Virus record (IMG/VR): IMGVR_UViG_3300023083_000001
Coordinates: 186,001-250,000 of that record
DNA length: 64,000 nt
Strand: one strand, 5' to 3'
Each line of letters starts with the position of its first letter. The stretch's first letter is position 1. Below, piece after piece: positions 5,051 to 34,967 of this stretch. Both the position numbers and the translations under genes were made by a program. The notes under the pieces are model-generated. The model ran no database searches. It had not been told where the DNA came from and was given only the letters and a program-made list of their open reading frames with translations.

Positions 5051-5884
5051 TCACCACTTAGGCTTACTGCCGAGTGATAACTTCAAGACCTTACGGTACT
5101 TTTCGGTATCGTTAAGTAATGCAATCTTGGTCCAGGTCGTAGAAAGGTAATCGTAGTACAGCTGGTTTGAATCAGCGTACTGGTCGGTGATCTCACGGAT
5201 ACGACCCAGACTCATACCTGCGCGGATTTGACCTTCATCCATGTCTACCACCAGGGTGTTGTGAATATGCGCTTTGGCTGCATAGACGACAAGCTGACTG
5301 AAGTTGTGGTAGTAGGCTGGTTTGATGTCGTTGAAGTTCGGTTCATGAGCCAACGTACAACGCAGGACCGCATCACCGATTATCTGGTTCATGTCGTTGA
5401 CCAGGATCGTGTTAATCCCAACCAATTGAACGTAGGAAGACCCCACCGACTGAACACCTGATGTACTGCGGATAATCTGTCGAGCAATCGACAGCATGTT
5501 GTTGGTATTGGAAGGAGTAATCCCACCACCAGCCCATGATCCCGTTGTGTAGCCGTAGTTGAGTTCGTGAGCGGAGATAATCCGACGACCACCTGTGGCT
5601 TCTCGCGGGAAACGATAGACCATGTTCCAACCATCGACCATCTCAAGCTCAGCCATCATGAGAGGCAGGTACATTTCTGTACCACCAACCAGGTTGACAT
5701 CGACTGCTACACGGCCTTCAATCACGTGTAGTCTGATCTGCTCATCGATTGAGGTGGTGGATACGTTGTCAAAGTAACGATCCCGCCGAGTCGGGTCGTA
5801 ACGTTTGGGCATGAAGGCTTGATCCAGAAGGTCCCTCGGAACTTCAGCTTTAACCCGCATGATTGCAACTTGTACTGGATCCAT
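5051..5884 (-). CDS. Conserved jumbo-phage protein, probably virion structural
   Basis: 277 aa, GGAGGA RBS, divergent from phuZ. Confidence 0.65.
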   Translation of the reverse strand: MDPVQVAIMRVKAEVPRDLLDQAFMPKRYDPTRRDRYFDNVSTTSIDEQIRLHVIEGRVAVDVNLVGGTEMYLPLMMAELEMVDGWNMVYRFPREATGGRRIISAHELNYGYTTGSWAGGGITPSNTNNMLSIARQIIRSTSGVQSVGSSYVQLVGINTILVNDMNQIIGDAVLRCTLAHEPNFNDIKPAYYHNFSQLVVYAAKAHIHNTLVVDMDEGQIRAGMSLGRIREITDQYADSNQLYYDYLSTTWTKIALLNDTEKYRKVLKLSLGSKPKW

Positions 5885-5967
5885 AAACGATTCCTCCCCG
5901 CAGGGTATACCTTAAGTCATACCACCTGCATTAAATTCGTAACACCCACATCTGTTAGGAGTAGTAA

Positions 5968-6960
5968 ATGTCTGATCTTATCGCTGCACGTACCCGTACT
6001 CTTCGTTTCATCGCTTGCGGCGGCACCGCGATTAACTTGCTGCGTAACTATCGTGACAATAAGCCGAAAGATTCTGATGCGTTGTCAGAAGAGCACTACA
6101 GCTATGTCGATACTTCGATCGCTAACCTCAAAGGTGTGTCGAACGACGAAGTGTATCTGCTGCAAGGCGTGGACGGTTCGGGTTCCGATCGTCCGAAGAA
6201 CGCCAAGGCCATCAAGACTGCGTTGCCTGAAATCATGGTCAAGCACGGCGCCGCTGATTTCAACATCGTGATCTTCTCGGCAGCAGGCGGCACTGGTTCG
6301 GTTGCAGGTCCAATGATCTTGGAACACCTGCTGGGTGACAAGAAGAACGCCATCGCAATCGTGATCGGCAGTCACGACAGCCTCAAGCGCACTACCAACA
6401 CCATCGGCACGCTACAAGGTCTGGAAGCCGCCGTGGCCCGTCTGGGTCGTCCCATCGTAATGCACTACAAAGAAAACGAACTGGACAAACCACATGCGGT
6501 CAACAACCGTGGTCCTCAGTTCGTGATGCAGACCGTGTCCATGCTGACCTCCGGCAAGAACGATCACCTGGACAGTGCAGACGTCAACAACCTGTTCAAC
6601 TTCCACACGGTTACACACCATGCGCCATCCCTGGCGATGTTGAACGTTTACGCAAACGCAGAACAACTGACCGAGAAAGTCAAAGCACCCATCGCGTTCG
6701 CCGCTTTGGTGCGTGACAGCGAAGAAGTAGTCCCTCAGCTCGGCCCGGATTACGACACTGTCGGTTATCTGCCATCGTCCAAGACCGCATACGACAACTC
6801 GTTCTACTTCGTGGTGACCACCGACGCATTGGCCGGCGTGTTCACTGAACTGAACAGTAAGCGTGAAAACGCAACCAAGCAGCAGAAAGTCCAGGCCAAG
6901 ACCACCAGTCTGTTGGGTGGCGACACCAAGCATGACGAAGACACCGGCCTGGTGTTCTAA
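5968..6960 (+). CDS. phuZ: PhuZ tubulin-like spindle protein
   Basis: FIACGGTAIN, GxDGSG and AAGGTGS tubulin/FtsZ signatures; acidic-hydrophobic C-tail DEDTGLVF. Confidence 0.95.
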   Translation: MSDLIAARTRTLRFIACGGTAINLLRNYRDNKPKDSDALSEEHYSYVDTSIANLKGVSNDEVYLLQGVDGSGSDRPKNAKAIKTALPEIMVKHGAADFNIVIFSAAGGTGSVAGPMILEHLLGDKKNAIAIVIGSHDSLKRTTNTIGTLQGLEAAVARLGRPIVMHYKENELDKPHAVNNRGPQFVMQTVSMLTSGKNDHLDSADVNNLFNFHTVTHHAPSLAMLNVYANAEQLTEKVKAPIAFAALVRDSEEVVPQLGPDYDTVGYLPSSKTAYDNSFYFVVTTDALAGVFTELNSKRENATKQQKVQAKTTSLLGGDTKHDEDTGLVF

Positions 6961-7424: not shown

Positions 7425-7793
7425 ATGCAAGACACCCCATTCTACATCGTGGACATATCGGAGTTGATTAACCGAGTGTCCCGAGGTGACCGGTTCCCAC
7501 CGGCGATATACGAAACGTGGATAGCTAATAAGTACACTAAAAACTGGGGTGTTCCATGTGTCAGTACCACGTTACTGGACATGGACCCAACGAGCATAAG
7601 AACGTTCTCGGGTAACCGGGAGCAAATTGTAATGAACGCACAAGAGCAAGGCGTGAATCCGATAGACTTTCTACCGGCACCTGATCAATTGTGGCATGAT
7701 GAACGCGGCATATGGCTGCTTGTAAAAGATAGCTATCTGCTGATGGGAGACGGCCGTGCAATTAAGAAACTGTGGCGAAATCTGTATTCTTGA
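7425..7793 (+). CDS. Hypothetical protein, array member 1
   Basis: GAGGT RBS before ATG 7425; FYIVDISEL motif. Confidence 0.7.
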   Translation: MQDTPFYIVDISELINRVSRGDRFPPAIYETWIANKYTKNWGVPCVSTTLLDMDPTSIRTFSGNREQIVMNAQEQGVNPIDFLPAPDQLWHDERGIWLLVKDSYLLMGDGRAIKKLWRNLYS

Positions 7794-8208
7794 TACTAAT
7801 GAGATCGTTGCTTCAGCATTCAGGGATCTGAAGAAGCATAATGAACATCTGGACCGAGCGGACCGGGAACATCTGACAAACGTGATCGCCGATATCTTTG
7901 ACGACCACATCACCGTCAACATGTACTGGACCAAGACAGGGACTCATCCAGATGCGGACCGTTATCTTGATAAGCTTGAAAAACTCATCAAGAAGCATCC
8001 AAGGTCTTACGAACTGATTGAAGATATCCGCGACAAGATCGACGAGTTATTGATGAACGTGGTGAGGCTGCCGACTTGGCATGAAATACACGTCAGAATC
8101 CGGGGGTCCAATATCCAGTTGGAGTTGGGTCAAGATTACCGAATTACCGACTGGATGAAAACCCATGCTAAGGAATACCGCATCGCCGCTGAAATTCGAG
8201 ACTGGTAG
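7756..8208 (+). CDS. Hypothetical protein, array member 2
   Basis: GGAG RBS before GTG; ICILDTNEI motif. Confidence 0.7.
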   Translation: MQLRNCGEICILDTNEIVASAFRDLKKHNEHLDRADREHLTNVIADIFDDHITVNMYWTKTGTHPDADRYLDKLEKLIKKHPRSYELIEDIRDKIDELLMNVVRLPTWHEIHVRIRGSNIQLELGQDYRITDWMKTHAKEYRIAAEIRDW

Positions 8209-16126: not shown

Positions 16127-18106
16127 ATGAGCAATAACGACGATTTCCAAACACGTAGCGACAGCCAACCCGAGGGCCGTCAGCCACGCCAGGAATCCCA
16201 AAGCAACGACCGTGCACAAGCCCGCGACGAGCGCCCTCGTCAAAGCCAACGCAATGACGGTGAGCAAGTGACTCTGGCTGACCTCGGTCGTCTGAACGCA
16301 CGTCCTGGTGTCGGTGGTCTGTCTGACGCAGCTCTGGTAGCAATGATCGAAGCTTTCGACGGCGCCAAAGCGTTCGACAAGCCAAACGTTCCTGAAGCAG
16401 TAAGCCGCAAGCGTTTCCGCGTGCTGCCACTGGATCAGAGCACTGGCCGTACGTCACTGTCCAGCCTCCTGGTCGTTCTGCCGACCGAAATCGCTGGCAA
16501 ACTCTTCACCCTGGTTTACGTTCTGCTGATCGAACAGCCGGGCGGCCCAGGTCTGCGTACTCTGTCTGATCGTGGCGAGCAATTCGAAGCCCTGATCCTG
16601 CCAGAAGACGTGATGACCGATCGTTACATCACCGTCATCAAGAGCCAGGTTGCCAACCTGCAAGACAACTCGAACATTCTGATCGTCGGTAGCCAAGTGC
16701 TGTTGTACAGCACCGTAGCCACCATCACCGAGAAAGAAGGTCAAGCTGCAATCGCCGCCGTCTACGACAACGCGCTCGACGCCATCTCCGGCTTCCGCGA
16801 AAACATCGTCGACGCACTGAGCGACAAACGCAACGACGGCATGCGTATCAACCCTGGCATGATTGCCCGGACTGACCGCCTGGAAGTGTCTTTCGATTAC
16901 AGCGGCAAAACCATCTCCGACTCTTCGGGTCTGCCGGTGCGTTCTGACGTGACTTCTGCCCTGTACTACTCGGCAGCAGCCCCTGAAGAAGAAAACCTGT
17001 ACTCCCGTACTCTGCTCGGCGAAGTCCGCGCTGGCCTGGACCTGTTCCTGACCGACGACGGCGTCGATCGTACCATCCCAAGCTTCGGTTCGCGCCGTCG
17101 CCGCGCTGGTGGTCGTGATGAAGTGGATCAGCCATTCTGGCAGCCAGTGTTCAACATCACTTCGATCAACTGCCCTGCTGGCATTCCGTTCTCGCTGGAA
17201 CTGGCTCAGCTGTTGCTGGCCCAGGTAGCACTGCAATCCAACGACTATCGTTGGGCGAACGTGCTGCGTCCTCGTTCCACCATCGCCGGTGGTCTGAAGC
17301 CAGTCGCACAACTGTCGCACCTGCACCTGCTGAACCCGGACAAGGAAAAGGCCGCCGTCATCAACGACGTCAGCCAGAACATGTCCGATCCCGATCTGTA
17401 CGACTTCCTCGACGTCACTGTCAAACCGGAAATCGTATTCGGCATGGCGATCCCTTCCAGCGGCGAGAAATCTTGGGTGCTCAGCATCTACGAGCGTATC
17501 GCACTGGCAGATCCGCGTGACGCCGAGAAACTGATCGACACCTTGTTCGCATCGGCCGACGTTCTGACCGGTGGTCGTTTCACGAAACTGTACGACGAAC
17601 TCTCCAACGGCACCAACCCGTCGCCGGTTGCGGCATACGGCACTCGCGCCTTCACCGGCACCTGGACCGATACCGACGGCAACGTGCGTCCTCTGAGCGA
17701 ATGGAACGTTCCGGCGGTCCTGACTTCGGTTGGCGTGAAGAACCCAGAGCTGGCTCAAGACTACCAGTACACCTTCGAAGACCGTCGTCACTCGGTCGAC
17801 TACAGCTTGGCACAACGCAACGGCATCCTGTCGCGCATTGTTCCAGGTCTGCACATCGTCGGTACCTGTGAGCAACTGAGCTTCCACCCTTGGTACATCC
17901 AAGCGTTGTCTCTGGCCCTGGCTGATGCGAACATGGCATCGCTGCCAACCAGCGGTGATGGCCTGCAACAGTCGCGTCGTGTGGGTAGCACCGACTTCTC
18001 GGCGTTCGCTACTGCGGATATCGGCTCTTCGCGCCGTCGTCCAAACGACACTGCTGATCGTGGCCGTGGTCGCGATCGCTTCAATGGCGGTGGCAACTAC
18101 TACTGA
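16127..18106 (+). CDS. chmA: Chimallin, major phage nuclear shell protein
   Basis: 659 aa, TAAGGAG RBS, strong codon bias, disordered tails, GLPVRSD motif, directly upstream of the nvRNAP beta' gene as in phiKZ gp54-gp55. Confidence 0.88.
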   Translation: MSNNDDFQTRSDSQPEGRQPRQESQSNDRAQARDERPRQSQRNDGEQVTLADLGRLNARPGVGGLSDAALVAMIEAFDGAKAFDKPNVPEAVSRKRFRVLPLDQSTGRTSLSSLLVVLPTEIAGKLFTLVYVLLIEQPGGPGLRTLSDRGEQFEALILPEDVMTDRYITVIKSQVANLQDNSNILIVGSQVLLYSTVATITEKEGQAAIAAVYDNALDAISGFRENIVDALSDKRNDGMRINPGMIARTDRLEVSFDYSGKTISDSSGLPVRSDVTSALYYSAAAPEEENLYSRTLLGEVRAGLDLFLTDDGVDRTIPSFGSRRRRAGGRDEVDQPFWQPVFNITSINCPAGIPFSLELAQLLLAQVALQSNDYRWANVLRPRSTIAGGLKPVAQLSHLHLLNPDKEKAAVINDVSQNMSDPDLYDFLDVTVKPEIVFGMAIPSSGEKSWVLSIYERIALADPRDAEKLIDTLFASADVLTGGRFTKLYDELSNGTNPSPVAAYGTRAFTGTWTDTDGNVRPLSEWNVPAVLTSVGVKNPELAQDYQYTFEDRRHSVDYSLAQRNGILSRIVPGLHIVGTCEQLSFHPWYIQALSLALADANMASLPTSGDGLQQSRRVGSTDFSAFATADIGSSRRRPNDTADRGRGRDRFNGGGNYY

Positions 18107-18193: not shown

Positions 18194-19684
18194 ATGGAAT
18201 TGATTACTCAGGATATCCATGAACCTCGGCAACGGTATCCTGGTCGAAAAGGTATTTACCCCATCATCGAGAACTTCGATGACATCTTTCGTCGTCTAGA
18301 TATCCAGCCCGTGTTGGCTAATGACCTGGATCTGACAACAGATGCCGGTAAAGAACGATTCAATGATCTGGTCTATACGAAGTACGATGGTGACGTGTTC
18401 TCTAACGTTCCCGCTTGTCCATGTCGTTACACCAAAGGTGGTAGCAAGATCCGTCACAAGTGTGTCCGTTGTGGGCACTTAGTTCTACCGATTACCGAAC
18501 AGTCCATCGAACCCATTGTCTGGGTGCGTGTGCCTGACGAACTCCCTGCTTTCATGAACCTGACTGTGTACCGACTACTGCGTGCTCGTTTCACCAAGAG
18601 CGGCTTCAGCGTAATCGACTACATGCTCGACCCGAAATACCGTCCTCCGAAACTGGAAAGTATCGAGGAAAATCTGACCAAAGCAATATGCCCTGTGCGT
18701 GGGATTGTTTATTTCCACAAACACTTCGACAAGATCATCACTGCTCTGTGTGACCTCCGGCACTTTCAGTCGGCGACTCGCGGTGCTGTGACGCTCAAGT
18801 TCGTAGAAGCTCACCGAAAGCTCATATTCTGTAAGTACATTCCGTTCCCTTCCAAGATCGGTTTCATTGTAGAAGATGTCGGCGATCGTAAGTACGTTGA
18901 CCCGAAGATGGCGCCTGCTCTTAATGCGCTGATCTCTCTGGCTAACGTCACCAACGGCGGCCGTTCAGCAGTACGTGACATGGAGAGCCGTGTAGCCCGT
19001 GCCATTGGCAGTCTGGCGAACTACTACTCCAGCAACGAACACAGCAAGATCTTCGATAAGAAAGGTATCTTGCGCAAACTGGTGTATGGGGTAAGTCCAC
19101 ACTTTACCTTCCGTACGGTTATCACCAGTAACCATAAACCTCACGACCATGAATCTCTCGAGACTCCATGGGGTGCAACAGTCCTGACGCTCAAGTTGCA
19201 TTTGGCGAACAAGCTGTTGGCAGAACGTTATACGCCGAATGAAATCCTGACGCTGATCTACGATAACACTCTGCGTACGCACTACAAGCTGGAAGAGCTG
19301 ATCGATATACTGATCGCGGAAAGTCCGGGTGGACGTGGTATTCCGTGTGGCTTTACCCGATTCCCATCGCTGAAACGCGGTTCTACCCAACGGTTCTTCA
19401 TCAACCGGGTGAAACGTGATCCTACAGCGCTGAGTACATCGATTTCGGTATTGACGCTTATTGCGCCGAACGCTGACTTTGATGGCGATTACATGACTGG
19501 ACAACTCTGCCTGGATAACCAGACAGCCAGAGCGTTTGACCGGATGGCGCCGTACACTGGGATCATGGATCTCAAACGCCCATTCCGTGTGGGTAATCAT
19601 GCGTCCATCCCAGCGCCTGTTCTATCGACAATCAATGCCCGTCTAGAAGAGGGTGATGACCTGTCAGTACCTGTGGAGGATTGA
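18194..19684 (+). CDS. rpoC: Non-virion RNA polymerase beta' N-terminal subunit (phiKZ gp55-like)
   Basis: Catalytic NADFDGD; zinc site CPC...CVRC; RFPSL motif. Confidence 0.93.
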   Translation: MELITQDIHEPRQRYPGRKGIYPIIENFDDIFRRLDIQPVLANDLDLTTDAGKERFNDLVYTKYDGDVFSNVPACPCRYTKGGSKIRHKCVRCGHLVLPITEQSIEPIVWVRVPDELPAFMNLTVYRLLRARFTKSGFSVIDYMLDPKYRPPKLESIEENLTKAICPVRGIVYFHKHFDKIITALCDLRHFQSATRGAVTLKFVEAHRKLIFCKYIPFPSKIGFIVEDVGDRKYVDPKMAPALNALISLANVTNGGRSAVRDMESRVARAIGSLANYYSSNEHSKIFDKKGILRKLVYGVSPHFTFRTVITSNHKPHDHESLETPWGATVLTLKLHLANKLLAERYTPNEILTLIYDNTLRTHYKLEELIDILIAESPGGRGIPCGFTRFPSLKRGSTQRFFINRVKRDPTALSTSISVLTLIAPNADFDGDYMTGQLCLDNQTARAFDRMAPYTGIMDLKRPFRVGNHASIPAPVLSTINARLEEGDDLSVPVED

Positions 19685-19685
19685 A

Positions 19686-20303
19686 ATGGCATACCTGCTG
19701 AGCCAGGCCGACAATGACGTCATCCATGCGACGACCCATGGCCTGATTAATAATGACGATCTCGGTTTCTTACGGGAACGTATGAGTTCTACCATGCGGA
19801 CGATGGGGAACTTTGCATCGAAGTATCTGAACGAAGCGCGTGAGAAGTTGGAGAAGTTCGATCTGGGTCGCCTCCGGGATCGAGTGGAAGTCATGCGTGA
19901 TCGTTTCGGTCGTCGATGGGACGAGGATCGTATCCTCGAAGTGGTGGACCTTGGTGGTTTCCAGAATGCCAAGCCTACCATGCGGAAATACATCATGGCT
20001 GAACCAAGAACCCGTCGTCTCTATCACCAGGGACGTTTGGACGGCTATGGTAGTTTGTATCAGGATGACGAACCTGATTGCGTTGGGCGTGAACACACAG
20101 CGTATCGTGAGGTCATGCAAGGCGCATCGGTAGGTGATGAAGAGGAAGACCGCTTCGTGACTTACCTGGGATTGGAGACCGAGGAAGGTCACCCACTATC
20201 CCACGTCGAACGTACGGCAGTCCGTCGTACATGGGCTGAGCAGAAAGCAATCCTGGATCGCGGTAAACAAGATCCAACGAGCCCGCTGCGCAAGACCCTG
20301 TAA
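19686..20303 (+). CDS. Conserved Chimalliviridae core protein (possibly gp59/Imp3-like)
   Basis: GGAGG RBS; MRKYIMAEP..R.LY..GRLDGY motif; the Imp3 link is positional inference. Confidence 0.55.
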   Translation: MAYLLSQADNDVIHATTHGLINNDDLGFLRERMSSTMRTMGNFASKYLNEAREKLEKFDLGRLRDRVEVMRDRFGRRWDEDRILEVVDLGGFQNAKPTMRKYIMAEPRTRRLYHQGRLDGYGSLYQDDEPDCVGREHTAYREVMQGASVGDEEEDRFVTYLGLETEEGHPLSHVERTAVRRTWAEQKAILDRGKQDPTSPLRKTL

Positions 20304-26921: not shown

Positions 26922-27716
26922 ATGGCTGACGACAGAAAACCCCGCAAAGACCCCACAGCGATTGACGACGGCAAACTCAAGCTGTTCGCCAAGCCGTTGA
27001 AAGATGATGGCTCAGCGCGCGCTCCATCCCTGCGGGTGAAGATGATCGAGAACAATCCATGCATCCACGTGGACCTCGGCATCAAGACTGAAGGGCGCAA
27101 CGGTAAAGAAGGCTACCCGATCTCGATCGAAACGCCGATGGAACCTCGTTCTTTCAACATGTTGATGTGCATCATCATGGACGTAGCGGCCGCCAAAGGC
27201 GCCTGCTCGTTGGAAATGGAAAACTGGGGTCACCCATTCCTCTGGAACAAAGATCAGGGTAAGAACGTCCGTTCTCCTGAGCGCATGATCATTTCCCGCT
27301 TCTGCATCTCCAAACGTGACGACGGCATGGTCACCTTCGGCGTTGCTGCTAAAGGCAAGCAGGACGTAACGTTCGAGTTCACTCCGAACGAATTCCACGC
27401 GTTGACTCAGAACGGTCAAGCGGTCGGTGTTTCCATCTCCTCCAAGCTCGCAGCACAAGCCTGGGCCGGTGTCTGGAAAGATCTGTACGTAACACACTTC
27501 GAACGGAACTGGGTAGAACCTGAGTTCATGAAGAAGCGTCGTCTGGAAAACATGCAACGCGCTAATGGCGGTGGCAGCGGCTACAACAGCGCACCTGCTG
27601 GCGGTGGTCAGCAACAGCGTCCACAGCAACAGAACAATTACCAGCAACAACCTACAGCGCCTGCTGGCGGCGGTGGCGTACCTGACTTCGACGTAGGGGA
27701 AGATATCCCTTTCTGA
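26922..27716 (+). CDS. chmC: ChmC-like nucleus-associated RNA-binding protein (phiKZ gp67/Imp6 position)
   Basis: Directly upstream of the sigma-like subunit; beta-rich domain followed by a G/Q/N-rich disordered tail. Confidence 0.65.
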   Translation: MADDRKPRKDPTAIDDGKLKLFAKPLKDDGSARAPSLRVKMIENNPCIHVDLGIKTEGRNGKEGYPISIETPMEPRSFNMLMCIIMDVAAAKGACSLEMENWGHPFLWNKDQGKNVRSPERMIISRFCISKRDDGMVTFGVAAKGKQDVTFEFTPNEFHALTQNGQAVGVSISSKLAAQAWAGVWKDLYVTHFERNWVEPEFMKKRRLENMQRANGGGSGYNSAPAGGGQQQRPQQQNNYQQQPTAPAGGGGVPDFDVGEDIPF

Positions 27717-27872: not shown

Positions 27873-29468
27873 ATGAAATTCAGCATCTCCAGTTTCACCA
27901 AACGCAGTTTCTCAATGGTTCAGGTCGACCATCCTGGCGAGAATGAACTTATCTTTAACGCAGCAGGCTACGCTAACACCAAGCCTGGCGCGGTGGTGGC
28001 TGATGCTGATTCAGAATTCGGTCAACGGGTAGAACTGTTTATCGAAGTCAACGAATTCATTTCACGTATGCCCGAAGCGACACAGTTGGCATTGTACGAC
28101 TGCTACGCGCGGTTGGAATCTGTCTACTCGAACTACGGCGGCATGGGTTTGACAGTCAAGCATTCCAGCGACAGTCTGGACAATATGCTGGCTGACATCA
28201 TTGGCGACATTTCCAAGATCGTAAAGCTTGCAGATCTGCGGGCTTACATCGTAGGTAACAAGAATATCAAATTGCCATCTGAGCTTTCAGATGAGTACAT
28301 CACAAACGACAAGATCACTCCATTGTACATGGAGCGTACCTATCGCAAAAGTGAGTACATCGATTTGACGGCCGTGGCAATGATGACACGGTTCCTGATT
28401 CCTGTCTGGGGTACTTACTTGCCGATCAGTGGTAAAGAGAACTCGCCAGACATGAAAGAATACAACGGTTATAAACTGTTGGATAAATCTGAGCTGTACA
28501 CGTGTCCTGCGCTTCAGCGTCTGGAAACGTACGTGCGGGCTAACCTGGTCGAAGGCGAGTACGAATTGACAATCGTGTTCAAGTTCTTGTCCAGCGAAGA
28601 AGTGCCGATCTACTTGATGGCATTGGCTCTGATCCGTAAACTCTCCATCGCGCCTCTGTCGGCTGAGTTCGACAAAGACCACTTGATGAAGATCGTGTAC
28701 AACTACGTCTGCGGTAACAACAACCGCATGCCGGCAGCCTTTGGCTCCAACATCAAACCAAAGACCGATAACGAAGGTCTGTCTGACGACAACGGTTCGG
28801 TGTGGTGCGTGTACAAGATGAAAGAACAGATCAGCACGGGCGATCTCATGATCGTGCAGGTCTACATCACCAACTATGTCTTCGCCGGGTTGGACATCGA
28901 GCCGACTCTGAAAGAAGAACGAATCAAGCAATGTGTTGAACGCGCCATGAACCTTCAAGACTTCGACCCTACCCCAGCACAGATTTCCTTGTGTCTGTGG
29001 GTGATGTCGACTGTTATTGCAGGTTGTGTGGTGGAGATGTTCGACAGGAAGACCCTGATGATATCCATGGGACTGGCTCAAGCCGTACTGTGGGAATGGG
29101 GTTATCCACAACTGGCTATCCTGATGACCGCCAATCTGATCCCACTCGAAGAAGGTGAGTTGTTGCCGCCTATCCCTCGTACCAAGATTAGCCAATCTAA
29201 TCGGGAACTGTTGGAAGTGATCTACCCGTACAAGTTGCCTGAAAGCAAACGCAGTGAAGCAGTCGTATCGACCAACCCAGGTATCCGGGGTGTGGAAGAA
29301 GTCGCGACTGAACTGTTCCGCAATGAATGGGAACCGCGTTGCCCTAAACCCCTGGCCGCCAGCTACTATCGTTCCGATGTTAGCCGACGTGTCGAAATCT
29401 CTACAGATATTCGTGATCAGATCGCCTCCTTGCTTATCAAGCTTGACGGTCATATTCGAATCATCTGA
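27873..29468 (+). CDS. Non-virion RNAP sigma-like specificity subunit (phiKZ gp68-like)
   Basis: 531 aa; TY..SEY.DL...R...PVWG motif; position in the gp67-gp71 block. Confidence 0.75.
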   Translation: MKFSISSFTKRSFSMVQVDHPGENELIFNAAGYANTKPGAVVADADSEFGQRVELFIEVNEFISRMPEATQLALYDCYARLESVYSNYGGMGLTVKHSSDSLDNMLADIIGDISKIVKLADLRAYIVGNKNIKLPSELSDEYITNDKITPLYMERTYRKSEYIDLTAVAMMTRFLIPVWGTYLPISGKENSPDMKEYNGYKLLDKSELYTCPALQRLETYVRANLVEGEYELTIVFKFLSSEEVPIYLMALALIRKLSIAPLSAEFDKDHLMKIVYNYVCGNNNRMPAAFGSNIKPKTDNEGLSDDNGSVWCVYKMKEQISTGDLMIVQVYITNYVFAGLDIEPTLKEERIKQCVERAMNLQDFDPTPAQISLCLWVMSTVIAGCVVEMFDRKTLMISMGLAQAVLWEWGYPQLAILMTANLIPLEEGELLPPIPRTKISQSNRELLEVIYPYKLPESKRSEAVVSTNPGIRGVEEVATELFRNEWEPRCPKPLAASYYRSDVSRRVEISTDIRDQIASLLIKLDGHIRII

Positions 29469-29494: not shown

Positions 29495-31078
29495 ATGGAA
29501 CTTATCAAACTGTCCTTCGTAGAAGCGGACGGGATGCTCAACCAGGTTATTCGCCCCTATGACCTGGATCAGCGTGGTTCGGCTATCGACCTCTTCTCCA
29601 AAGCCACTGAGAAAGGTTTCAATATCAGCGCTAAACGTTTGGCAGCAGTAGCCGCTCCACTCATGGGTCCGTCTACTCGTCGCAAGATCGACGCGCATAT
29701 CTCCAACGGTTGGGATGCACCCCGCATCATGTTCGCAATGGTGATCGCTACCGGCAACCGTGCCAACAGCAAAGAGTATCACTACATCGTCGGCCACACT
29801 GACGAATCCATGCACACTGTGCGTGGTACCAACGTGCGCTTCGAGAAGCGGATGAAGTTGTATTTCAACAACATCACCCGTATCCACATGACCGAAGCGA
29901 CCTACATGACGCGAGATCGTGGTCATCGTTCGTTGTGGCAACCAAAGATCATCACGCACGATCAGGTGTTGAACCGTAGCGCGATTGAAGGTTTCAACGG
30001 CGGTCGCCGCGAACACCGTAACCGCGCCATGTCTCTTCGTCCAACCGATCTGTTTACACGCCAGGGTGGTGAAACGGCATTCGGTGCGTACTTGACTGAT
30101 AAAGATGTACCTGTCAAGAACCTGTGTGGCGTCTTCAGCGGTCAGTTGCGTTCTTCCACTCGGGAGAATAACAGCTCGACCAACTTCATGCGTCGTAGTC
30201 TCAATGCGTTCGTCAGCTCAGCTGCCGATCCGCAGTCGGCATTCATTGACGACAACCACGACCATGAAACCATGCAGCGTACGATCGACAGCGTGATCGA
30301 GAACAGCATCGATGCCGATCCGTACATCGAACAGATCCGCCGCGATTCCAACATCCTGGAACAAGGGTACATCACGTTCGGCGAACTGATGGACATGAAC
30401 CCAGACTTTGACGAAGACTCGCAGCTTCCGTTCATCCCGCTGGACCGTAACAACCGTAACCGTATCGTGGACAACATCGTTGGCTTCAAATCCGACGAGA
30501 ACGAATCCATTGCTGCGGCCATGATTGCTCACTCTCTGCCAGGCATCCTGATCAACTCGATGTATTCATCGGTTGATAACCTGACCATCACTACACGCGC
30601 GCGCGTCGGTGAGAACAAGTTGCAGTCAGCGTTTCCACATCCGTTTGTTGAAGGCATGTCGATCGCAGCAAGCTGGCCGTACTTCGAAGATCAGATCGAA
30701 AACATCTTGATCCAGGAAGTCAGCAAGGGCGGTCAGTTTGAATTCGATGCCCGCATCGATGCCAACATTGACCAGATGATCAAGATCTGGATCCGCATGG
30801 ACGGCGCGCCTGAGGCGTACTTCGAGTTCCCTGCGTTCTGCGATTCCCTGCTGTCTCCGATGTTGGAAGACAACATGAAGTCGTTCGAAGATCTGTCCAA
30901 GGGTATCGTGGATCTGGCTGGCGATTTGTCCAGGCAGCGTCTGCGTAGTAGTCCATCCGCCGTAGTGGAACCGGTCATCTTGACGGCCACTGAATCCATG
31001 CGCAATACACGTACCGACGGTATTGACCGTGGTGCAAGTCAACCTCGCGCATCCAGTCGTACTGACCGGTCCTGGTAA
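29495..31078 (+). CDS. picA: PicA/Imp1 nuclear import protein (phiKZ gp69-like)
   Basis: 527 aa after the gp68-like gene; RPY, I.NGW...R..F, LRP.D.F and P.F.DSL.SP motifs. Confidence 0.75.
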   Translation: MELIKLSFVEADGMLNQVIRPYDLDQRGSAIDLFSKATEKGFNISAKRLAAVAAPLMGPSTRRKIDAHISNGWDAPRIMFAMVIATGNRANSKEYHYIVGHTDESMHTVRGTNVRFEKRMKLYFNNITRIHMTEATYMTRDRGHRSLWQPKIITHDQVLNRSAIEGFNGGRREHRNRAMSLRPTDLFTRQGGETAFGAYLTDKDVPVKNLCGVFSGQLRSSTRENNSSTNFMRRSLNAFVSSAADPQSAFIDDNHDHETMQRTIDSVIENSIDADPYIEQIRRDSNILEQGYITFGELMDMNPDFDEDSQLPFIPLDRNNRNRIVDNIVGFKSDENESIAAAMIAHSLPGILINSMYSSVDNLTITTRARVGENKLQSAFPHPFVEGMSIAASWPYFEDQIENILIQEVSKGGQFEFDARIDANIDQMIKIWIRMDGAPEAYFEFPAFCDSLLSPMLEDNMKSFEDLSKGIVDLAGDLSRQRLRSSPSAVVEPVILTATESMRNTRTDGIDRGASQPRASSRTDRSW

Positions 31079-31116
31079 GGGACCGGCGTTACCTTCTTCA
31101 ATAACAGGAAATAAGC

Positions 31117-32343
31117 ATGTCAACTAAACTTGAAACACTACTGGACTTCGACACGAAAGTGTTGGGCGATGTCGGCGTGTTCGATAATGATGGCGGCGGC
31201 ATGTTGTCTTATACTGGCCGGGATGGCAAGCCTAAGGCAGTGACCATCAGTGGTAAACGTCTGGTTCTGCCTACTCAGCAGTTCCTGCGTGACGGCGACT
31301 GGGAGAAACGCATTGCGTGGCACCCACTGTCCGAACAGATCAACGAAGGTCCAAGCCCGGTCCTGAACGCCACCAAGAACTACATCACCGAACGGTTGAA
31401 ACTGACCTTCCGTGAACTGGCTCTGGCGTTGATGGAACTGGCTGCTGAAGAAAAGCGCCACAAGGCATTGACCGCCAAAGCTGGTAAGTACCTGGTGACT
31501 TTGCCAGGCGCTGATCAGAAAGTAGTCGACACCCTGCGTAAGGTTCTGGACTCGGTCGGTGATGCGCCTGAGAAACGTTCGATTACCATGTTCCTCAAGA
31601 ACGGCGGCAAGAACGGTGCTCTGCGTAGCTGCATGGTCAGCTTCCCAATCCTGGATGAATCTGAAACCGAAGTAGAAGATGGTGCAACCTTCTTCGGCGT
31701 GAAGATGCCTCGTAAGACTAAGGACAAGCAATTGATCCTGAGTCTGTTCGAATACATCCTGGGCGACAAAGACTATCGCGAGACTTACACGCAGTCGTCT
31801 AGCAACAGCGATGCGCCGTACTTGCATTGCCTGCTGCTGTCGTTCCAAGTGTTGGCTGAGCGTTTCAACAAGCTGATCGAAGTTCACGTTGCGGCTTGTC
31901 CACAACTGTCGGGTTTCAAGTTCGGTTTGGGCTGGCTTGAAAACATGAACGACTTCGACAACTTCGCAAAAGTCTACGGCGTGGCGGTTCCATCTCTTCC
32001 GGGTAACAGCGGCGTTACTGCCTCTGAACCTGAAGACTCCAGCAAAGACGTGTTCGAAGCCGATGCTGAAGATCTGGGCAAGGTTGCTATTGACCTGCCG
32101 TGGGATGAGCGTCCAGGTGACACTGGTCGTCGTGATTCACCGTCTCGCGATCGTCGATCGGTAGAGCGTGAACCGGTGCGTCAGGAAGGTGTTCCAACTC
32201 GTAGCCTCAAGGACGTGTTGGGCGGCAGCCGTCGTAATGACGAACCAGACCGTGAGACTCGCGGTAGCAGCTGGCGCAGCAGCGGTCGTGATGACCGTGG
32301 TGGCGGTGGACGTCCAAGCGGCCGTGGTGGTCGTAGCTGGTAA
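31117..32343 (+). CDS. Nucleus-associated core protein (phiKZ gp70-like)
   Basis: GKRLVLPT...HPLSE....G.SPV motif; R/G-rich disordered tail. Confidence 0.7.
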   Translation: MSTKLETLLDFDTKVLGDVGVFDNDGGGMLSYTGRDGKPKAVTISGKRLVLPTQQFLRDGDWEKRIAWHPLSEQINEGPSPVLNATKNYITERLKLTFRELALALMELAAEEKRHKALTAKAGKYLVTLPGADQKVVDTLRKVLDSVGDAPEKRSITMFLKNGGKNGALRSCMVSFPILDESETEVEDGATFFGVKMPRKTKDKQLILSLFEYILGDKDYRETYTQSSSNSDAPYLHCLLLSFQVLAERFNKLIEVHVAACPQLSGFKFGLGWLENMNDFDNFAKVYGVAVPSLPGNSGVTASEPEDSSKDVFEADAEDLGKVAIDLPWDERPGDTGRRDSPSRDRRSVEREPVRQEGVPTRSLKDVLGGSRRNDEPDRETRGSSWRSSGRDDRGGGGRPSGRGGRSW

Positions 32344-32398: not shown

Positions 32399-32743
32399 TC
32401 AACTAACCGTAAGGCTGGTCCGATAGACTTGTTTCAACCGTGCAACTGTAGATTCATCAGGGACGAGAAGACTGTTCAAGTTCTCATCCATGGCGTGTGT
32501 ATCATTCAACCCGTTAAGTCGCATAACAAGCCGATGGTCTTCGAGCGCAACATTCGAAGCTAGAAGAAACCCCGTCAGATCAAATCGGTAGAGATAACCC
32601 GTCTCTGGCGAGATATAAACGCTTCGTGTGCTGGGGTCATTCTTCAGCAGTATGACCAACGACTCGATAAAAACATTATATTCATCGGTCATGGTGATGA
32701 GGTCCGGCGATTGGATCATGTAGCTATCTAGCTTCGTGGGCAT
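32399..32743 (-). CDS. Small conserved protein, possibly LysM/T4 gp53-like baseplate component
   Basis: AGGAG RBS; Y.FDL.GFL...VMRLNG pattern. Confidence 0.55.
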   Translation of the reverse strand: MPTKLDSYMIQSPDLITMTDEYNVFIESLVILLKNDPSTRSVYISPETGYLYRFDLTGFLLASNVALEDHRLVMRLNGLNDTHAMDENLNSLLVPDESTVARLKQVYRTSLTVS

Positions 32744-32810: not shown

Positions 32811-34967
32811 ATGAGTTCGCATAACCCTAAAGAGTTTTTGATCCCTCCTGAGATGGTTCCTATCAGTGGATTGAATCCATACTTTCACTATGTAGCGTCA
32901 GCCCGGCAAGTAATGTTCACCGGTAACCTGCCGCAAGCGCTGTTGGTGGATGGGCGTACTCGTAAACGGCAGCAGTCTGGCTTTGAGCGAGAAGTTGCTC
33001 GTGCCACGTTTAGCCACTCCTTCCCTCGGGATGCGGTGGTGCTTAAAATCATTCCCCGCTTCAGTTCCCAGATGTGGGGTGAGAACTTCGCAATCAACCC
33101 CATGGACCTTGTGATCTACGAGGACTATGAAACCCGACAGCTTGATTGTATCGAATTGTCCAAGTTTCACGTAATGCACCAGCATTACGGGTTCCAGTTC
33201 GATTACGACATGGACGTGTACAACAAGCTGACCAAAGGTGCCCGTTTTGAGAAGGGTACTGTCATTGCACGTAGCCCAGCAGTGACACCGGACGGCGACT
33301 ACATGTACGGTCTGGAAACCAACGTCTGTATGATTTCCCACCCGTCAGTGACTGAGGACGGTGTGATGTACAGCAAGAGCTATGCAAATCGCATTCGCTC
33401 TGATGGTTTCGAAAGCCGGATCATTCGGTGTGGGCGTACACATTACCCCATCAACTGGAACGGCAATGCCAGTGAATACAAACCAATCCCGGATGTCGGC
33501 GACTTCATTCGTCCGAACGGTTTGATCGCAGCGCTTCGTCCATACGACAGCAAGTTCGACCCGGTCTACATGTCCAGGAAGAAGTTGTTCGCTCCGGTGT
33601 ACGGCTTGGACACACCTACCTACGGCATTCCCGATGCTCAGGTAGTTGACATCAAGGTGTTGCACAACGACCGTCTGCCAAATCCTCGGATGCCTGAGGA
33701 GATGGGTAAGCAGTTCCGCAAGTATCACGAAGCGGATAAGCGGTTCTACACCGACATCGTCAAGACGTGCCTGTGTCGCAATGGACAGAAGATGCAAAAG
33801 GACGTAGACATGTCTCCACGTCTGCGTGCTCTGGTGTTTGAAGCCATCGCCCGTGCTGGTGAAGCATTGATCGAAGAAGGCATCTGGCCTAAGGCTGAGT
33901 CTGACGAACTGCGTGCTCGCAAGAACTATCGCGGTGAACTGCTGGACGAATTCCAAGTCGAGATCATCTATAAGTACAAGACCACAGTGGGCGAAGGTCC
34001 TAAGGTTACGGACTTGGACGGTGGTAAAGGCGTAGGTTCGTTGGTAGCTGAAGACGAAGACATGCCGGTGGATGCATTCGGTAACCGTGCCGAAGTGGTA
34101 ATCTTTGCCAACTCAACTGTTAACCGTCTGAACAACGGCAGGCAGCATGAGCAGGTAGTAGGCGCCGCAGGGCGTGATGTAATCAAACGCATCCGCCGTA
34201 CGTACGGTCTGCCAGACGTTGGGGCTATTCCAGACCAAGTCATCCGTGATGCAGTAACAAAGAACGAAGCCCTGTCCAACAAGAACTTCGGTTACTTGAT
34301 GGGCTTCTACAAGATGGTCAGTCCTAAACAGTGGAAGCTCCTTAACCGTAAGGAAACTATCCCGATGGGTCGCCATCTGAAACACTTGATCGAAGTCATC
34401 AAAGACGGCGACGATCCGTACGGTCTATACATTCAGATCGTGTCGGACTCTGGCGTTCGGATGGACAAGGTCATTAACGAAATCAAGAACGGTCCGTATC
34501 GTCCCGAGATGTCTCCGGTCACGTACAAGGACTTTGACGGGAAGTTTGTAACGACCAAGACAGATGTCCTGATTGGTCCGAACTACTACCTGGCGCTTGA
34601 GAAGACAGCGACAGACTGGTCTGGTGTATCTTCCTCGAAGGTGAACCATTTCGGTGTGAACGCTCGTCTGACCAATGCGGACAAGTACACCTCGCCTGGA
34701 CGTCAAACCGTTACTCGTTCCATGGGTGAATCGGAAGGTCGTAACCTGGCGCACGCAATGGGTGGTGAACATGTTGCCAACATCATGGACATGAACAACA
34801 ACCCAGTAGTCCACAAAGAAGTCTGCCTCACAGTCTTGACGCACCCAACTCCGACGAACATCGAAGCCGTGGTGGATCGGGAGTTGTTCAAGATGGGTGG
34901 TCACAGGCCTTTGGCTTATGCCATTCACCAGTTGGTGTGTTCGGGTAAAAACATCTCTCGCAAGTAA
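32811..34967 (+). CDS. rpoB: Non-virion RNA polymerase beta C-terminal subunit (phiKZ gp71-73-like, uninterrupted)
   Basis: SARQVM, TEDG, GPKVTDLDGGKGV, NRLNNG and RSMGESE RpoB motifs. Confidence 0.9.
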   Translation: MSSHNPKEFLIPPEMVPISGLNPYFHYVASARQVMFTGNLPQALLVDGRTRKRQQSGFEREVARATFSHSFPRDAVVLKIIPRFSSQMWGENFAINPMDLVIYEDYETRQLDCIELSKFHVMHQHYGFQFDYDMDVYNKLTKGARFEKGTVIARSPAVTPDGDYMYGLETNVCMISHPSVTEDGVMYSKSYANRIRSDGFESRIIRCGRTHYPINWNGNASEYKPIPDVGDFIRPNGLIAALRPYDSKFDPVYMSRKKLFAPVYGLDTPTYGIPDAQVVDIKVLHNDRLPNPRMPEEMGKQFRKYHEADKRFYTDIVKTCLCRNGQKMQKDVDMSPRLRALVFEAIARAGEALIEEGIWPKAESDELRARKNYRGELLDEFQVEIIYKYKTTVGEGPKVTDLDGGKGVGSLVAEDEDMPVDAFGNRAEVVIFANSTVNRLNNGRQHEQVVGAAGRDVIKRIRRTYGLPDVGAIPDQVIRDAVTKNEALSNKNFGYLMGFYKMVSPKQWKLLNRKETIPMGRHLKHLIEVIKDGDDPYGLYIQIVSDSGVRMDKVINEIKNGPYRPEMSPVTYKDFDGKFVTTKTDVLIGPNYYLALEKTATDWSGVSSSKVNHFGVNARLTNADKYTSPGRQTVTRSMGESEGRNLAHAMGGEHVANIMDMNNNPVVHKEVCLTVLTHPTPTNIEAVVDRELFKMGGHRPLAYAIHQLVCSGKNISRK

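What the first reader, a model, noticed from the sequence alone, without database searches (positions are those of the whole stretch)
31040..32343. PicA and its neighbour both end in RSW
Seen: two adjacent, otherwise dissimilar proteins end ...RASSRTDRSW and ...RPSGRGGRSW after Arg-rich disordered tails. The codons differ (CGG TCC TGG versus CGT AGC TGG), arguing against simple DNA duplication. Known: ChmA lattices assemble through terminal peptide segments. Inference: a shared C-terminal docking signal for the nuclear shell or a common partner.
Basis: partly seen in the sequence, partly recalled or inferred. Interest (0 to 1): 0.6.

Follow-up and report, generated by a model that had tools for sequence, protein, structure and literature searches.

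The report
Shared C-terminal tryptophan tag, phage-nucleus proteins
Three unrelated proteins of a nucleus-forming jumbo phage, including the protein importer PicA and its neighbour, end in the same short tag (basic residue, any residue, tryptophan) that is conserved and changes together across related phages, so it is probably a docking peptide for one shared, still unidentified partner.

Summary
PicA/Imp1 (29495-31078) ends ...TDRSW and the next gene, a phiKZ gp70 / PhiPA3 gp64 homologue (31117-32343), ends ...GGRSW. The Arg and Ser codons differ.

A shared tripeptide between adjacent genes is weak evidence alone: 0.11 such pairs are expected per genome, and this genome has a second one. The comparative evidence is strong.
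- In a well-supported 29-member clade, 26 PicA and 25 gp70-like proteins end in W. Their tails are otherwise hypervariable and almost free of W.
- One subclade lost W in both proteins at once (SII or TKF in PicA; SMF, SLF or VRF in gp70).
- A third unrelated 150-aa protein (7756-8208, ends RDW) ends in W in 17 of 21 distant representatives. It ends in SII in exactly the two SII contigs.
- Other clades show matched ends too: PhiPA3 LGLL/LGLL, FLC9 WKL/YRL.
- Across 18 lineages the likeness sits in the last four residues (p = 2e-5) and not further upstream.

Best reading: a C-terminal docking peptide for one co-evolving receptor at the phage nucleus. The receptor is unknown. ChmA's own terminus does not co-vary with the motif, and the one ChmA-tail complex prediction gave no answer. 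I found no description of the motif in the searched literature.

The parts
29495..31078 (+). PicA / Imp1 homologue (527 aa), the protein importer of chimalliviruses
   Evidence: phrog_3141 E 3e-54. tblastn to PhiPA3 gp63. E 9e-23 to the phiKZ gp69 locus. Gene order gp68-gp69-gp70-RNAP beta as in phiKZ and PhiPA3.
30929..31075 (+). PicA C-terminal tail (about residues 479-527): hypervariable and rich in R, S, D and T
   Evidence: The PHROG match stops at residue 478 and the last nearly invariant alignment column is R482. Across the clade the tails are unalignable and contain 0% W before the last residue.
31067..31075 (+). PicA terminal tag R-S-W (CGG TCC TGG), followed by TAA
   Evidence: Terminal W in 26 of 29 clade members, entropy 0.57 bits against 2.0-2.8 at the 11 positions before it; position -2 is K, R or P. 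29 of 33 word-search homologues end in W.
31117..32343 (+). phiKZ gp70 / PhiPA3 gp64 homologue (408 aa), a nuclear-shell-associated protein of unknown function
   Evidence: phrog_3520 E 2.6e-64. tblastn to PHIKZ070 at 28.5% identity, E 9e-21. AF2 model: residues 1-300 mostly pLDDT above 90. No PDB fold match. PhiPA3 gp64 localises to the shell (PMC10643120).
32023..32340 (+). gp70-like disordered tail (residues 303-408): rich in R, D, G and S, with RG/RGG repeats
   Evidence: pLDDT below 50 over 303-308, 320-333, 335-363 and 369-408. It is the most RDGS-rich C-terminal tail in the genome.
32332..32340 (+). gp70-like terminal tag R-S-W (CGT AGC TGG), followed by TAA
   Evidence: Terminal W in 25 of 29 clade members, entropy 0.69 bits; position -2 is R in 22 of 29. 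35 of 41 full-length word-search homologues end in W.
7756..8208 (+). Third, unrelated 150-aa protein carrying the same kind of tag (ends I-R-D-W; tag codons 8197-8205)
   Evidence: Orthologues end GKGW, RRW, KRW and HSW in W-type phages, and SII in both SII-type contigs. 17 of 21 representatives with E <= 1e-10 in the 1.84-billion-protein library end in W. AF2 pLDDT 91, folded over residues 1-141, last 9 residues coil at about pLDDT 64. No Pfam, PDB or cultured-phage match.
32352..32377 (+). Terminator-like hairpin just after the gp70-like stop; it closes the gp68-PicA-gp70 gene string
   Evidence: 10-bp stem with 7 GC pairs, followed by a T-rich run.
16127..18106 (+). ChmA (chimallin, major nuclear shell protein), a candidate receptor. 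Its own tail is R/D/G-rich and ends NYY.
   Evidence: PF25677 on all homologues. phrog_4795 nuclear shell protein. phmmer hit to phiKZ gp54. Tail sequences.
26922..27716 (+). ChmC / Imp6 homologue, a known direct binder of Imp1 in phiKZ. It has a different, acidic C-terminal tip (ends EDIPF).
   Evidence: phrog_3284 E 7.6e-25. BLASTP to phiKZ gp67 E 8e-9. Syntenic position.

Best explanation
The last residues of PicA/Imp1, of the gp70-like shell-associated protein and of a third 150-aa protein form a short linear motif, roughly [K/R]-x-W with a free carboxylate. The motif sits at the tip of a flexible tail.

Inferred mechanism: the aromatic side chain and the free C-terminus plug into one pocket of a common receptor. 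This brings several unrelated proteins to the same place at or in the phage nucleus, most likely the import or shell-associated assembly to which PicA belongs. Because one pocket reads all the tags, a change in the pocket forces all tags to change together. That would explain why W was replaced by SII, S[ML]F and SII in all three proteins of one subclade. It would also explain why other chimallivirus clades carry different but matched ends (LGLL/LGLL, WKL/YRL, RRSY/RRSF).

Shown here: the motif, its position-specific conservation, its presence on three non-homologous proteins, its co-variation, and the flexibility of the tails. Inferred: that it binds anything at all, and that the partner is phage-encoded and located at the nucleus. 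The receptor is not identified.
For: (1) Terminal W occurs in 26/29 PicA and 25/29 gp70-like proteins of a clade with 98% support. Entropy is 0.57 and 0.69 bits against 1.2-2.8 at the preceding 11 positions. W is otherwise 0% and 0.6% of the last 60 residues.

(2) Coordinated switch: the 100%-supported subclade L039/L031/L049 has TKF|VRF, SII|SMF and SII|SLF. The sister lineage L050 has RRSY|RRSF.

(3) The third family (7756-8208) ends in W in 17 of 21 representatives. It ends in SII on both SII-type contigs: G001, and the Logan contig of L049.

(4) Lineage-level permutation over 18 lineages: same-phage PicA and gp70 ends are more alike than cross-phage ends over the last 4 residues (z 4.4, p 2e-5). 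At -4..-7 the signal falls to z 1.5, and it is absent further upstream, so this is not a tail-composition effect.

(5) The folded parts are not homologous and the tails share no DNA similarity; the Ser codons are TCC and AGC. The identity is therefore kept at the protein level.

(6) In PhiPA3 only PicA and gp64 end in GLL among 394 genes, and both end LGLL.

(7) Literature: PhiPA3 gp63 and gp64 both localise to the shell and both co-purify with GFP-ChmB (PMC10643120). C-terminally tagged Imp1 is inactive.

(8) The tags sit on flexible ends.
Against: No binding was shown. The only complex job (ChmA core plus gp70 tail) gave no answer.

Independent evolutionary events are few. A contrast test finds just 2 independent W changes in PicA, both matched in gp70, which cannot reach significance.

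Uncoupled cases exist. L051 has PicA RDW but gp70 RRRR. The third family lacks the tag in G004 and G007. In about 10 of the 18 lineages scored the two ends do not match: there gp70 ends in an aromatic residue followed by one or two residues ending in Arg, while PicA ends NIL, FSY or DDL.

PicA-sfGFP still forms shell puncta in three model phages. phiKZ Imp1 and gp70 did not co-purify from E. coli, although the constructs appear to have been tagged at a terminus.
Confidence: 0.6

Rival explanations
1. The tag docks specifically into the ChmA lattice, in a groove like those that take ChmA's own N- and C-terminal segments, and so anchors the three proteins in the shell. It is a special case of the best explanation with the receptor named.
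For: ChmA lattices are held together by terminal segments (review PMC12908238). ChmA, PicA and gp70-like have the three most R/D/G/S-rich C-terminal tails of this genome, and all end in aromatic residues. PhiPA3 gp63 and gp64 are labelled by ChmA proximity labelling and localise to the shell.
Against: ChmA's own terminus (NYY, IDY, LEY, WDRR) differs from the tag and does not follow the W to SII/F switch. PicA forms one or two puncta rather than coating the shell, and does so with a blocked C-terminus.
Confidence: 0.2
2. The receptor is PicA itself. Under this reading the tag is an import or handover signal on cargo and adaptor proteins (gp70-like, the 150-aa protein). PicA's own copy would mediate self-association into the punctum, or auto-inhibition.
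For: phiKZ gp70 is listed among nuclear proteins. PicA has several distinct cargo interfaces and forms a higher-order punctum that AF2 cannot explain. phiKZ has small cargo-specific import factors (Imp2, Imp4, Imp5), and the 150-aa protein could be an analogue of these.
Against: Published work finds that cargo is recognised through surface patches rather than terminal peptides, and many cargos are imported with C-terminal GFP. Imp1 and gp70 did not co-purify. No similarity between the 150-aa protein and any phiKZ protein was found.
Confidence: 0.12
3. The receptor is a host protein that reads C-termini, for example an AAA+ unfoldase or adaptor, a tail-specific protease or a PDZ-type domain. 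The tag changes when the phage changes host.
For: Basic residues followed by a hydrophobic C-terminal residue resemble C-terminal recognition tags of bacterial AAA+ proteases; this is my own knowledge and was not tested here. A host shift would change all tags of a phage at once, as observed.
Against: The tag differs among fairly close relatives, whereas such host machines are very conserved. The tagged proteins known from model phages are stable, abundant, early shell-associated proteins. The hosts of these metagenomic phages are unknown, so nothing could be tested.
Confidence: 0.1
4. There is no specific receptor. The terminal aromatic residue acts as a generic sticker (cation-pi contacts with the Arg-rich tails) that helps low-complexity tails of shell proteins to condense, or it has another non-binding role.
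For: gp70-like tails are RG/RGG-rich. ChmC forms condensates through its disordered C-terminus and needs it for shell binding. Tail composition is shared among ChmA, PicA and gp70 within a phage: R/D/G-rich here, Q/M/G/N-rich in phiKZ.
Against: A sticker need not sit exactly at the last position, yet W is essentially confined to it. The third family has only a 9-residue extension and no low-complexity tail. Replacement of W by aliphatic II in two proteins of one subclade fits a pocket better than cation-pi chemistry.
Confidence: 0.06
5. It is coincidence or shared ancestry of the tails, with no function.
For: Adjacent genes sharing three terminal residues arise by chance at about 0.11 per genome, and a second such pair (LGK) exists here.
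Against: Conservation across proteins of 36-70% identity with unalignable tails, a third family carrying the tag, and the coordinated switch. No homology between the proteins and no DNA similarity between the tails.
Confidence: 0.02

Closest known systems
PicA / Imp1 (phiKZ gp69, PhiPA3 gp63) and the gp70 / gp64 family of Chimalliviridae
   Same: The two window genes are homologues in the same conserved gene order. Both families are reported as nuclear-shell-associated, and PicA as the essential import factor.
   Different: The papers read here describe no shared C-terminal motif. This clade uses [K/R]-x-W. The model phages use GLL-type ends (PhiPA3 LGLL/LGLL, phiKZ QVL/RLL). Identity to cultured phages is only about 20-31%.
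Encapsulin cargo-loading peptides and microcompartment encapsulation peptides (my own knowledge)
   Same: A short terminal peptide on a flexible linker is shared by otherwise unrelated proteins and addresses them to one protein shell. This is what the motif most likely works like.
   Different: Binding to the shell protein was not shown here. The sequences are unrelated. At least PicA works at or in the shell as machinery rather than as enclosed cargo.
ChmA N- and C-terminal segments that tie the chimallin lattice together (PMC12908238)
   Same: Flexible tails of phage-nucleus proteins that end in aromatic residues and, in ChmA, dock into neighbouring subunits.
   Different: ChmA's terminus (NYY and similar) is not the same motif and does not co-vary with it.
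SSB C-terminal tip (acidic, ending IPF) and proteasome-activator HbYX tails (my own knowledge)
   Same: The very last residue and its free carboxylate are read by a hydrophobic pocket, so one short tail serves as a hub or docking signal.
   Different: The tag here follows basic rather than acidic residues. The SSB-like acidic tip is found on a different protein of this locus, ChmC/Imp6.

Membership tests
PicA / Imp1 (protein importer of chimalliviruses) | Sequence homology to phiKZ gp69 / PhiPA3 gp63 | tested here: met
   phrog_3141 E 3e-54 over residues 1-478. tblastn to PhiPA3 gene 063. E 9e-23 and 1.7e-20 to the phiKZ and PhiPA3 loci.
PicA / Imp1 (protein importer of chimalliviruses) | Conserved position between the nvRNAP gp68-like gene and the gp70-like gene, in a genome that encodes ChmA | tested here: met
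   Gene order. ChmA at 16127-18106 with PF25677.
PicA / Imp1 (protein importer of chimalliviruses) | Localises to the nuclear periphery and is needed for selective protein import | not testable with these tools
   Known only for phiKZ, PhiPA3 and Goslar.
phiKZ gp70 / PhiPA3 gp64 shell-associated protein | Sequence homology and position directly downstream of PicA | tested here: met
   phrog_3520 E 2.6e-64. PHIKZ070 hit at 28.5% identity, E 9e-21. Synteny in 20 cultured phages.
phiKZ gp70 / PhiPA3 gp64 shell-associated protein | Folded N-terminal domain plus a long low-complexity C-terminal tail | tested here: met
   AF2: residues 1-300 confident, 303-408 disordered. Tails of homologues.
Terminal targeting peptide of a protein compartment (encapsulin or microcompartment type) | The same short terminal peptide on otherwise unrelated proteins, set off by a flexible linker | tested here: met
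   Three non-homologous families carry it. The ends are flexible.
Terminal targeting peptide of a protein compartment (encapsulin or microcompartment type) | The peptide binds a defined site on the shell protein | tested here: inconclusive
   The complex job with ChmA residues 73-608 and the gp70 tail 369-408 returned no answer.
Terminal targeting peptide of a protein compartment (encapsulin or microcompartment type) | The peptide is necessary and sufficient for targeting | not testable with these tools
   Needs tail deletions and GFP-tail fusions in infected cells.
Mimic of ChmA's own C-terminal segment | The tag resembles and co-varies with the ChmA C-terminus of the same phage | tested here: not met
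   ChmA ends NYY (window and G004), IDY (G003), LEY (G001, an SII-type phage) and WDRR (G002).

The most novel reading that the evidence does not exclude
Nucleus-forming phages use a peptide 'address code'. A C-terminal tag read by one pocket of a so far unidentified receptor gathers the importer PicA, the gp70-like protein and small adaptor-like proteins into a single import assembly on the shell. The tag-pocket pair evolves fast and in step: W, then F/II in one subclade, and GLL or [W/Y][K/R]L in other clades. Related co-infecting phages therefore cannot use each other's parts. The tag would be a handle for fishing out the missing component of the import machine.
Probability: 0.3. Interest if true: 0.85.

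Novelty: new variant of a known kind. Interest (0 to 1): 0.66.

Why it matters
How PicA/Imp1 is held at the phage nuclear shell, what else belongs to the import complex, and what gp70/gp64 does are open questions in the papers read here. A three-residue tag shared by PicA, gp70 and a third protein, changing in step, makes these questions directly testable. Peptide pull-downs could identify the receptor. Point mutations of one residue could separate localisation from function. The matched LGLL ends of PhiPA3 allow the test in a cultivable model phage.

It also offers an explanation for a published puzzle, that C-terminally tagged Imp1 localises but is inactive. It cautions that co-purification experiments done with C-terminal tags may have masked the relevant contact.

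Tried and rejected
- Complex prediction: one job with ChmA core (residues 73-608, alignment A3) and the gp70 tail (369-408, alignment A1) scored 0.02 against a mark of 0.32. The tool's verdict was 'no answer'. It is not evidence for or against binding.
- Fold searches: the gp70-like model had no Foldseek hit at E <= 0.001 and a best VIA Z of 5.7, which is within noise. The 150-aa model had no Foldseek hit. No fold is assigned to either.
- Remote homology between PicA and gp70-like: rejected, hhalign probability 1.5%.
- Gene conversion or duplication of the tails: rejected, longest shared DNA word is 11 nt.
- Tags as copies of ChmA's own terminus: rejected.
- Phylogenetic contrast test on 'ends in W', 'ends aliphatic' and 'ends aromatic': the direction was never opposite, but there were only 2-6 contrasts, so it cannot reach significance.
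- A third GLL-ending protein in PhiPA3, or an LL-ending one in phiKZ: none convincing. The three-family pattern is so far specific to the window's clade.
- megablast of the region against cultured phages, and a single-protein scan of IMG/VR, found nothing. Profile-based scans were needed.
- The DNA of one PicA exception (P0070, ends LKY) could not be fetched, so its partner is unknown.
- Contigs behind L039, L050 and L051 are not held for genome search, so their third-family genes could not be checked.
Full report
**What is there.** The window is part of a 258,357-bp metagenomic contig with 50.7% GC (Ga0247734_1000011). It belongs to a nucleus-forming jumbo phage. It encodes:
- chimallin ChmA at 16127-18106 (PF25677, phrog_4795);
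- an Imp3-like protein at 19653-20303;
- a ChmC/Imp6 homologue at 26922-27716;
- then the conserved string gp68-like (27873-29468), PicA/Imp1 (29495-31078), gp70-like (31117-32343), a small convergent gene (32399-32743, minus strand) and the non-virion RNA polymerase beta subunit (32811-34967).

The order is that of phiKZ gp68-gp69-gp70-gp71 and PhiPA3 gp62-gp63-gp64-gp65. No cultured phage is close at the DNA level. Protein identities to cultured phages are about 20-31%.

**The observation.** PicA ends ...RASSRTDRSW and the gp70-like protein ends ...RPSGRGGRSW.
- The folded parts are unrelated (hhalign probability 1.5%).
- The gp70-like tail (residues 303-408) is disordered in a confident AF2 model (overall pLDDT 80.7, mostly above 90 for residues 1-300).
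- A terminator-like hairpin follows the gp70 stop.

**Is it more than chance?** Taken alone, barely. Only these two of about 306 genes end in SW. But shuffling C-termini among genes gives 0.11 adjacent pairs with the same last three residues per genome, and this genome has a second such pair ending LGK. The case rests on relatives.

**Conservation.** Word searches of the 5.8-billion-protein collection gave 41 full-length gp70-like proteins, 35 ending in W, and 33 PicA proteins, 29 ending in W, at 36-70% identity. I then paired PicA and gp70 from the same contig for 53 distinct phages:
- 20 cultured phages, via annotated records;
- IMG/VR and metagenome loci;
- contigs looked up by protein;

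A tree of the concatenated folded parts puts the window in a 29-member clade with 98% support. In that clade the last residue is W in 26 PicA and 25 gp70-like proteins. Entropy there is 0.57 and 0.69 bits, against 1.2-2.8 bits at each of the eleven positions before it. W makes up 0% and 0.6% of the other 59 tail residues. Position -2 is mostly K/R. The tag is roughly [K/R]-x-W at the free C-terminus.

**Co-variation.** One subclade with 100% support lost W in both proteins: TKF|VRF (L039), SII|SMF (L031) and SII|SLF (L049). Matched ends in other lineages:

| Lineage | PicA end | gp70 end |
|---|---|---|
| L050 | RRSY | RRSF |
| DT01 | KFKF | RRRY |
| PhiPA3 | DLGLL | GLGLL |
| Phabio | LGLL | LGLI |
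| Viktualia | LGLL | MGLI |
| Psa21 | EGL | NGL |
| phiKZ | QVL | RLL |
| FLC9 | WKL | YRL |
| LucasX | SGLL | GGVL |

In PhiPA3 only these two of 394 genes end in GLL.

I treated 18 lineages as units and scored residues counted from the C-terminus with BLOSUM62. Same-lineage PicA and gp70 ends are more alike than cross-lineage ends:
- last four residues: z 4.4, p 2e-5;
- last three residues: p 2e-4;
- last residue alone: p 0.006;
- positions -4 to -7: z 1.5, p 0.07;
- further upstream: no signal.

The likeness is therefore terminal and not a by-product of similar tail composition.

Caveats:
- The lineages are not fully independent.
- A strict contrast test finds only two independent changes of 'PicA ends in W'. 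Both are matched in gp70, but that is too few for significance.
- L051 is uncoupled (RDW|RRRR).
- In about ten of the 18 lineages the ends do not match. There gp70 typically ends in an aromatic residue followed by one or two residues ending in Arg (FQPR, YYRR, WRR, SFR).

**A third family.** I scanned the whole genomes of the window phage and of two relatives for proteins ending in W. This exposed a 150-aa protein (window 7756-8208, ends IRDW) whose orthologues also end in W.

| Genome (PicA end \| gp70 end) | 150-aa protein ends |
|---|---|
| G003 (GKGW \| GRGW) | GKGW |
| G005 | RRW |
| G006 | KRW |
| G002 | HSW |
| G001 (SII \| SMF) | PSII |
| L049 contig (SII \| SLF) | VSII |
| G004, G007 | no tag |

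In a search of 1.84 billion representatives, 17 of the 21 hits with E <= 1e-10 end in W, mostly as [K/R]-x-W.

Its AF2 model is confident (pLDDT 91) over residues 1-141, with a 9-residue floppy end that carries the tag. It has no Pfam, PDB or cultured-phage match.

Three non-homologous proteins thus share the tag, and all three switched together in the SII subclade. A small GNAT acetyltransferase elsewhere in the genome also ends in W in all seven genomes examined. It lacks the basic residue at -2, so I leave it as an uncertain fourth member.

**Mechanism.** The simplest account is a docking peptide. The terminal aromatic (or, in the subclade, aliphatic) side chain and the free carboxylate fit one pocket on one receptor, so the tags must follow the pocket when it changes. 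Published data place the tagged proteins at the phage nucleus.
- PhiPA3 gp63 and gp64 localise to the shell and co-purify with GFP-ChmB (PMC10643120).
- PicA/Imp1 forms one or two puncta on the shell and is essential for import (PMC11087766 and bioRxiv 10.1101/2024.03.27.586873).
- Imp1 with a C-terminal mNeonGreen localises but is inactive. PicA-sfGFP still forms its punctum.

This fits a tag needed for a functional contact rather than for gross localisation, although wild-type protein was also present in those cells. The negative Imp1-gp70 co-purification in E. coli used terminally tagged proteins. It does not exclude a contact that needs a free C-terminus.

**Which receptor?** Unknown.
Its own tail is of the same R/D/G-rich kind; ChmA, PicA and gp70-like are the top three such tails in the genome.
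- However, ChmA ends NYY, IDY, LEY or WDRR, with no relation to the W/SII switch.
- PicA's folded domain, another phage protein, and a host C-terminus reader all remain possible. I rate them in the rivals section.

**Comparison with known systems.** Functionally this looks like the terminal targeting peptides of encapsulins and bacterial microcompartments, or like hub tails such as the SSB tip (my own knowledge). I do not file it under any of them, because binding was not shown.

The two genes themselves are ordinary members of the PicA/Imp1 and gp70/gp64 families. The new element is the shared, co-evolving C-terminal tag. I found no mention of it in the papers on PicA, Imp1, ChmB, ChmC or the nvRNAP import pathway, nor in two full-text searches. 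The library holds only open-licence papers and preprints.

**Verdict.** The 'ChmA lattice' version is open.

Noticed in passing
window 26922-27716 (+); also L001 833-1573, L002 2472-3230 and others: The ChmC/Imp6 homologue ends in an acidic-aromatic tip (here ...DFDVGEDIPF) after a G/Q/N-rich linker. The tip is conserved across distant chimalliviruses: phiKZ FDEDMPSF, PhiPA3 FDDEIPNF, PhiEaH1 DFDSDIPF, 2050HW FDNDIPW, FLC9 SEDLPF. It looks like the C-terminal tip of bacterial SSB (my own knowledge). Deleting the ChmC C-terminus abolishes shell binding in PhiPA3. No paper in the library links ChmC and SSB.
   Followed up: partly
G000:C1:72326-72757 (outside the window; locus L121): A small GNAT acetyltransferase (PF00583, 26.9 bits) ends in W in all seven related genomes examined (VWGW, LLAW, TMGW, VLGW twice, SIAW, SITW). 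It lacks the basic residue at -2. It may be a fourth tag carrier, or the W may simply be structural.
   Followed up: partly
window 16127-18106, 29495-31078, 31117-32343; L012 5649-7529, L001: Tail composition is shared among the shell proteins of one phage. ChmA, PicA and gp70-like have the three most R/D/G/S-rich C-terminal tails of this genome. In phiKZ the same three proteins have Q/M/G/N/P-rich tails. The gp70-like tails of this clade are RG/RGG repeats, a composition typical of RNA-binding, condensate-forming regions.
   Followed up: partly
window 32399-32743 (-): A 114-aa gene (phrog_3455) lies convergent to gp70-like, shares its terminator hairpin, and sits just upstream of the RNA polymerase beta gene. 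A minus-strand gene of 95-122 aa at this spot recurs in most chimalliviruses examined. Its function is unknown.
   Followed up: no
G000:C1:45766-47135 (outside the window): A second adjacent gene pair of this genome shares its last three residues (LGK, proteins of 291 and 132 aa). Two such pairs against 0.11 expected. Conservation was not examined.
   Followed up: no
L020 5295-6620 (+), Pseudomonas phage Viktualia PV037725.1: The record annotates a minus-strand CDS (5328-6719) where the plus strand encodes a full gp70 homologue of 441 aa ending GMGLI. This is probably a mis-called gene.
   Followed up: partly
window 5968-6960 (+) and 7756-8208 (+): The 150-aa tag-bearing gene lies three genes downstream of a 330-aa gene. 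In related contigs, the gene at the equivalent position carries Pfam Tubulin, i.e. it is PhuZ-like. The window copy itself was not scanned against Pfam.
   Followed up: no
L005, L008, L013-L019, L021 (cultured phages of other clades): Outside the matched clades, gp70 homologues mostly end in an aromatic residue followed by one or two residues ending in Arg (FQPR, FGR, YYRR, WRR, FHR, FLR, SFR). PicA there ends in unrelated hydrophobic residues. This may be a second, different kind of terminal motif for gp70.
   Followed up: no
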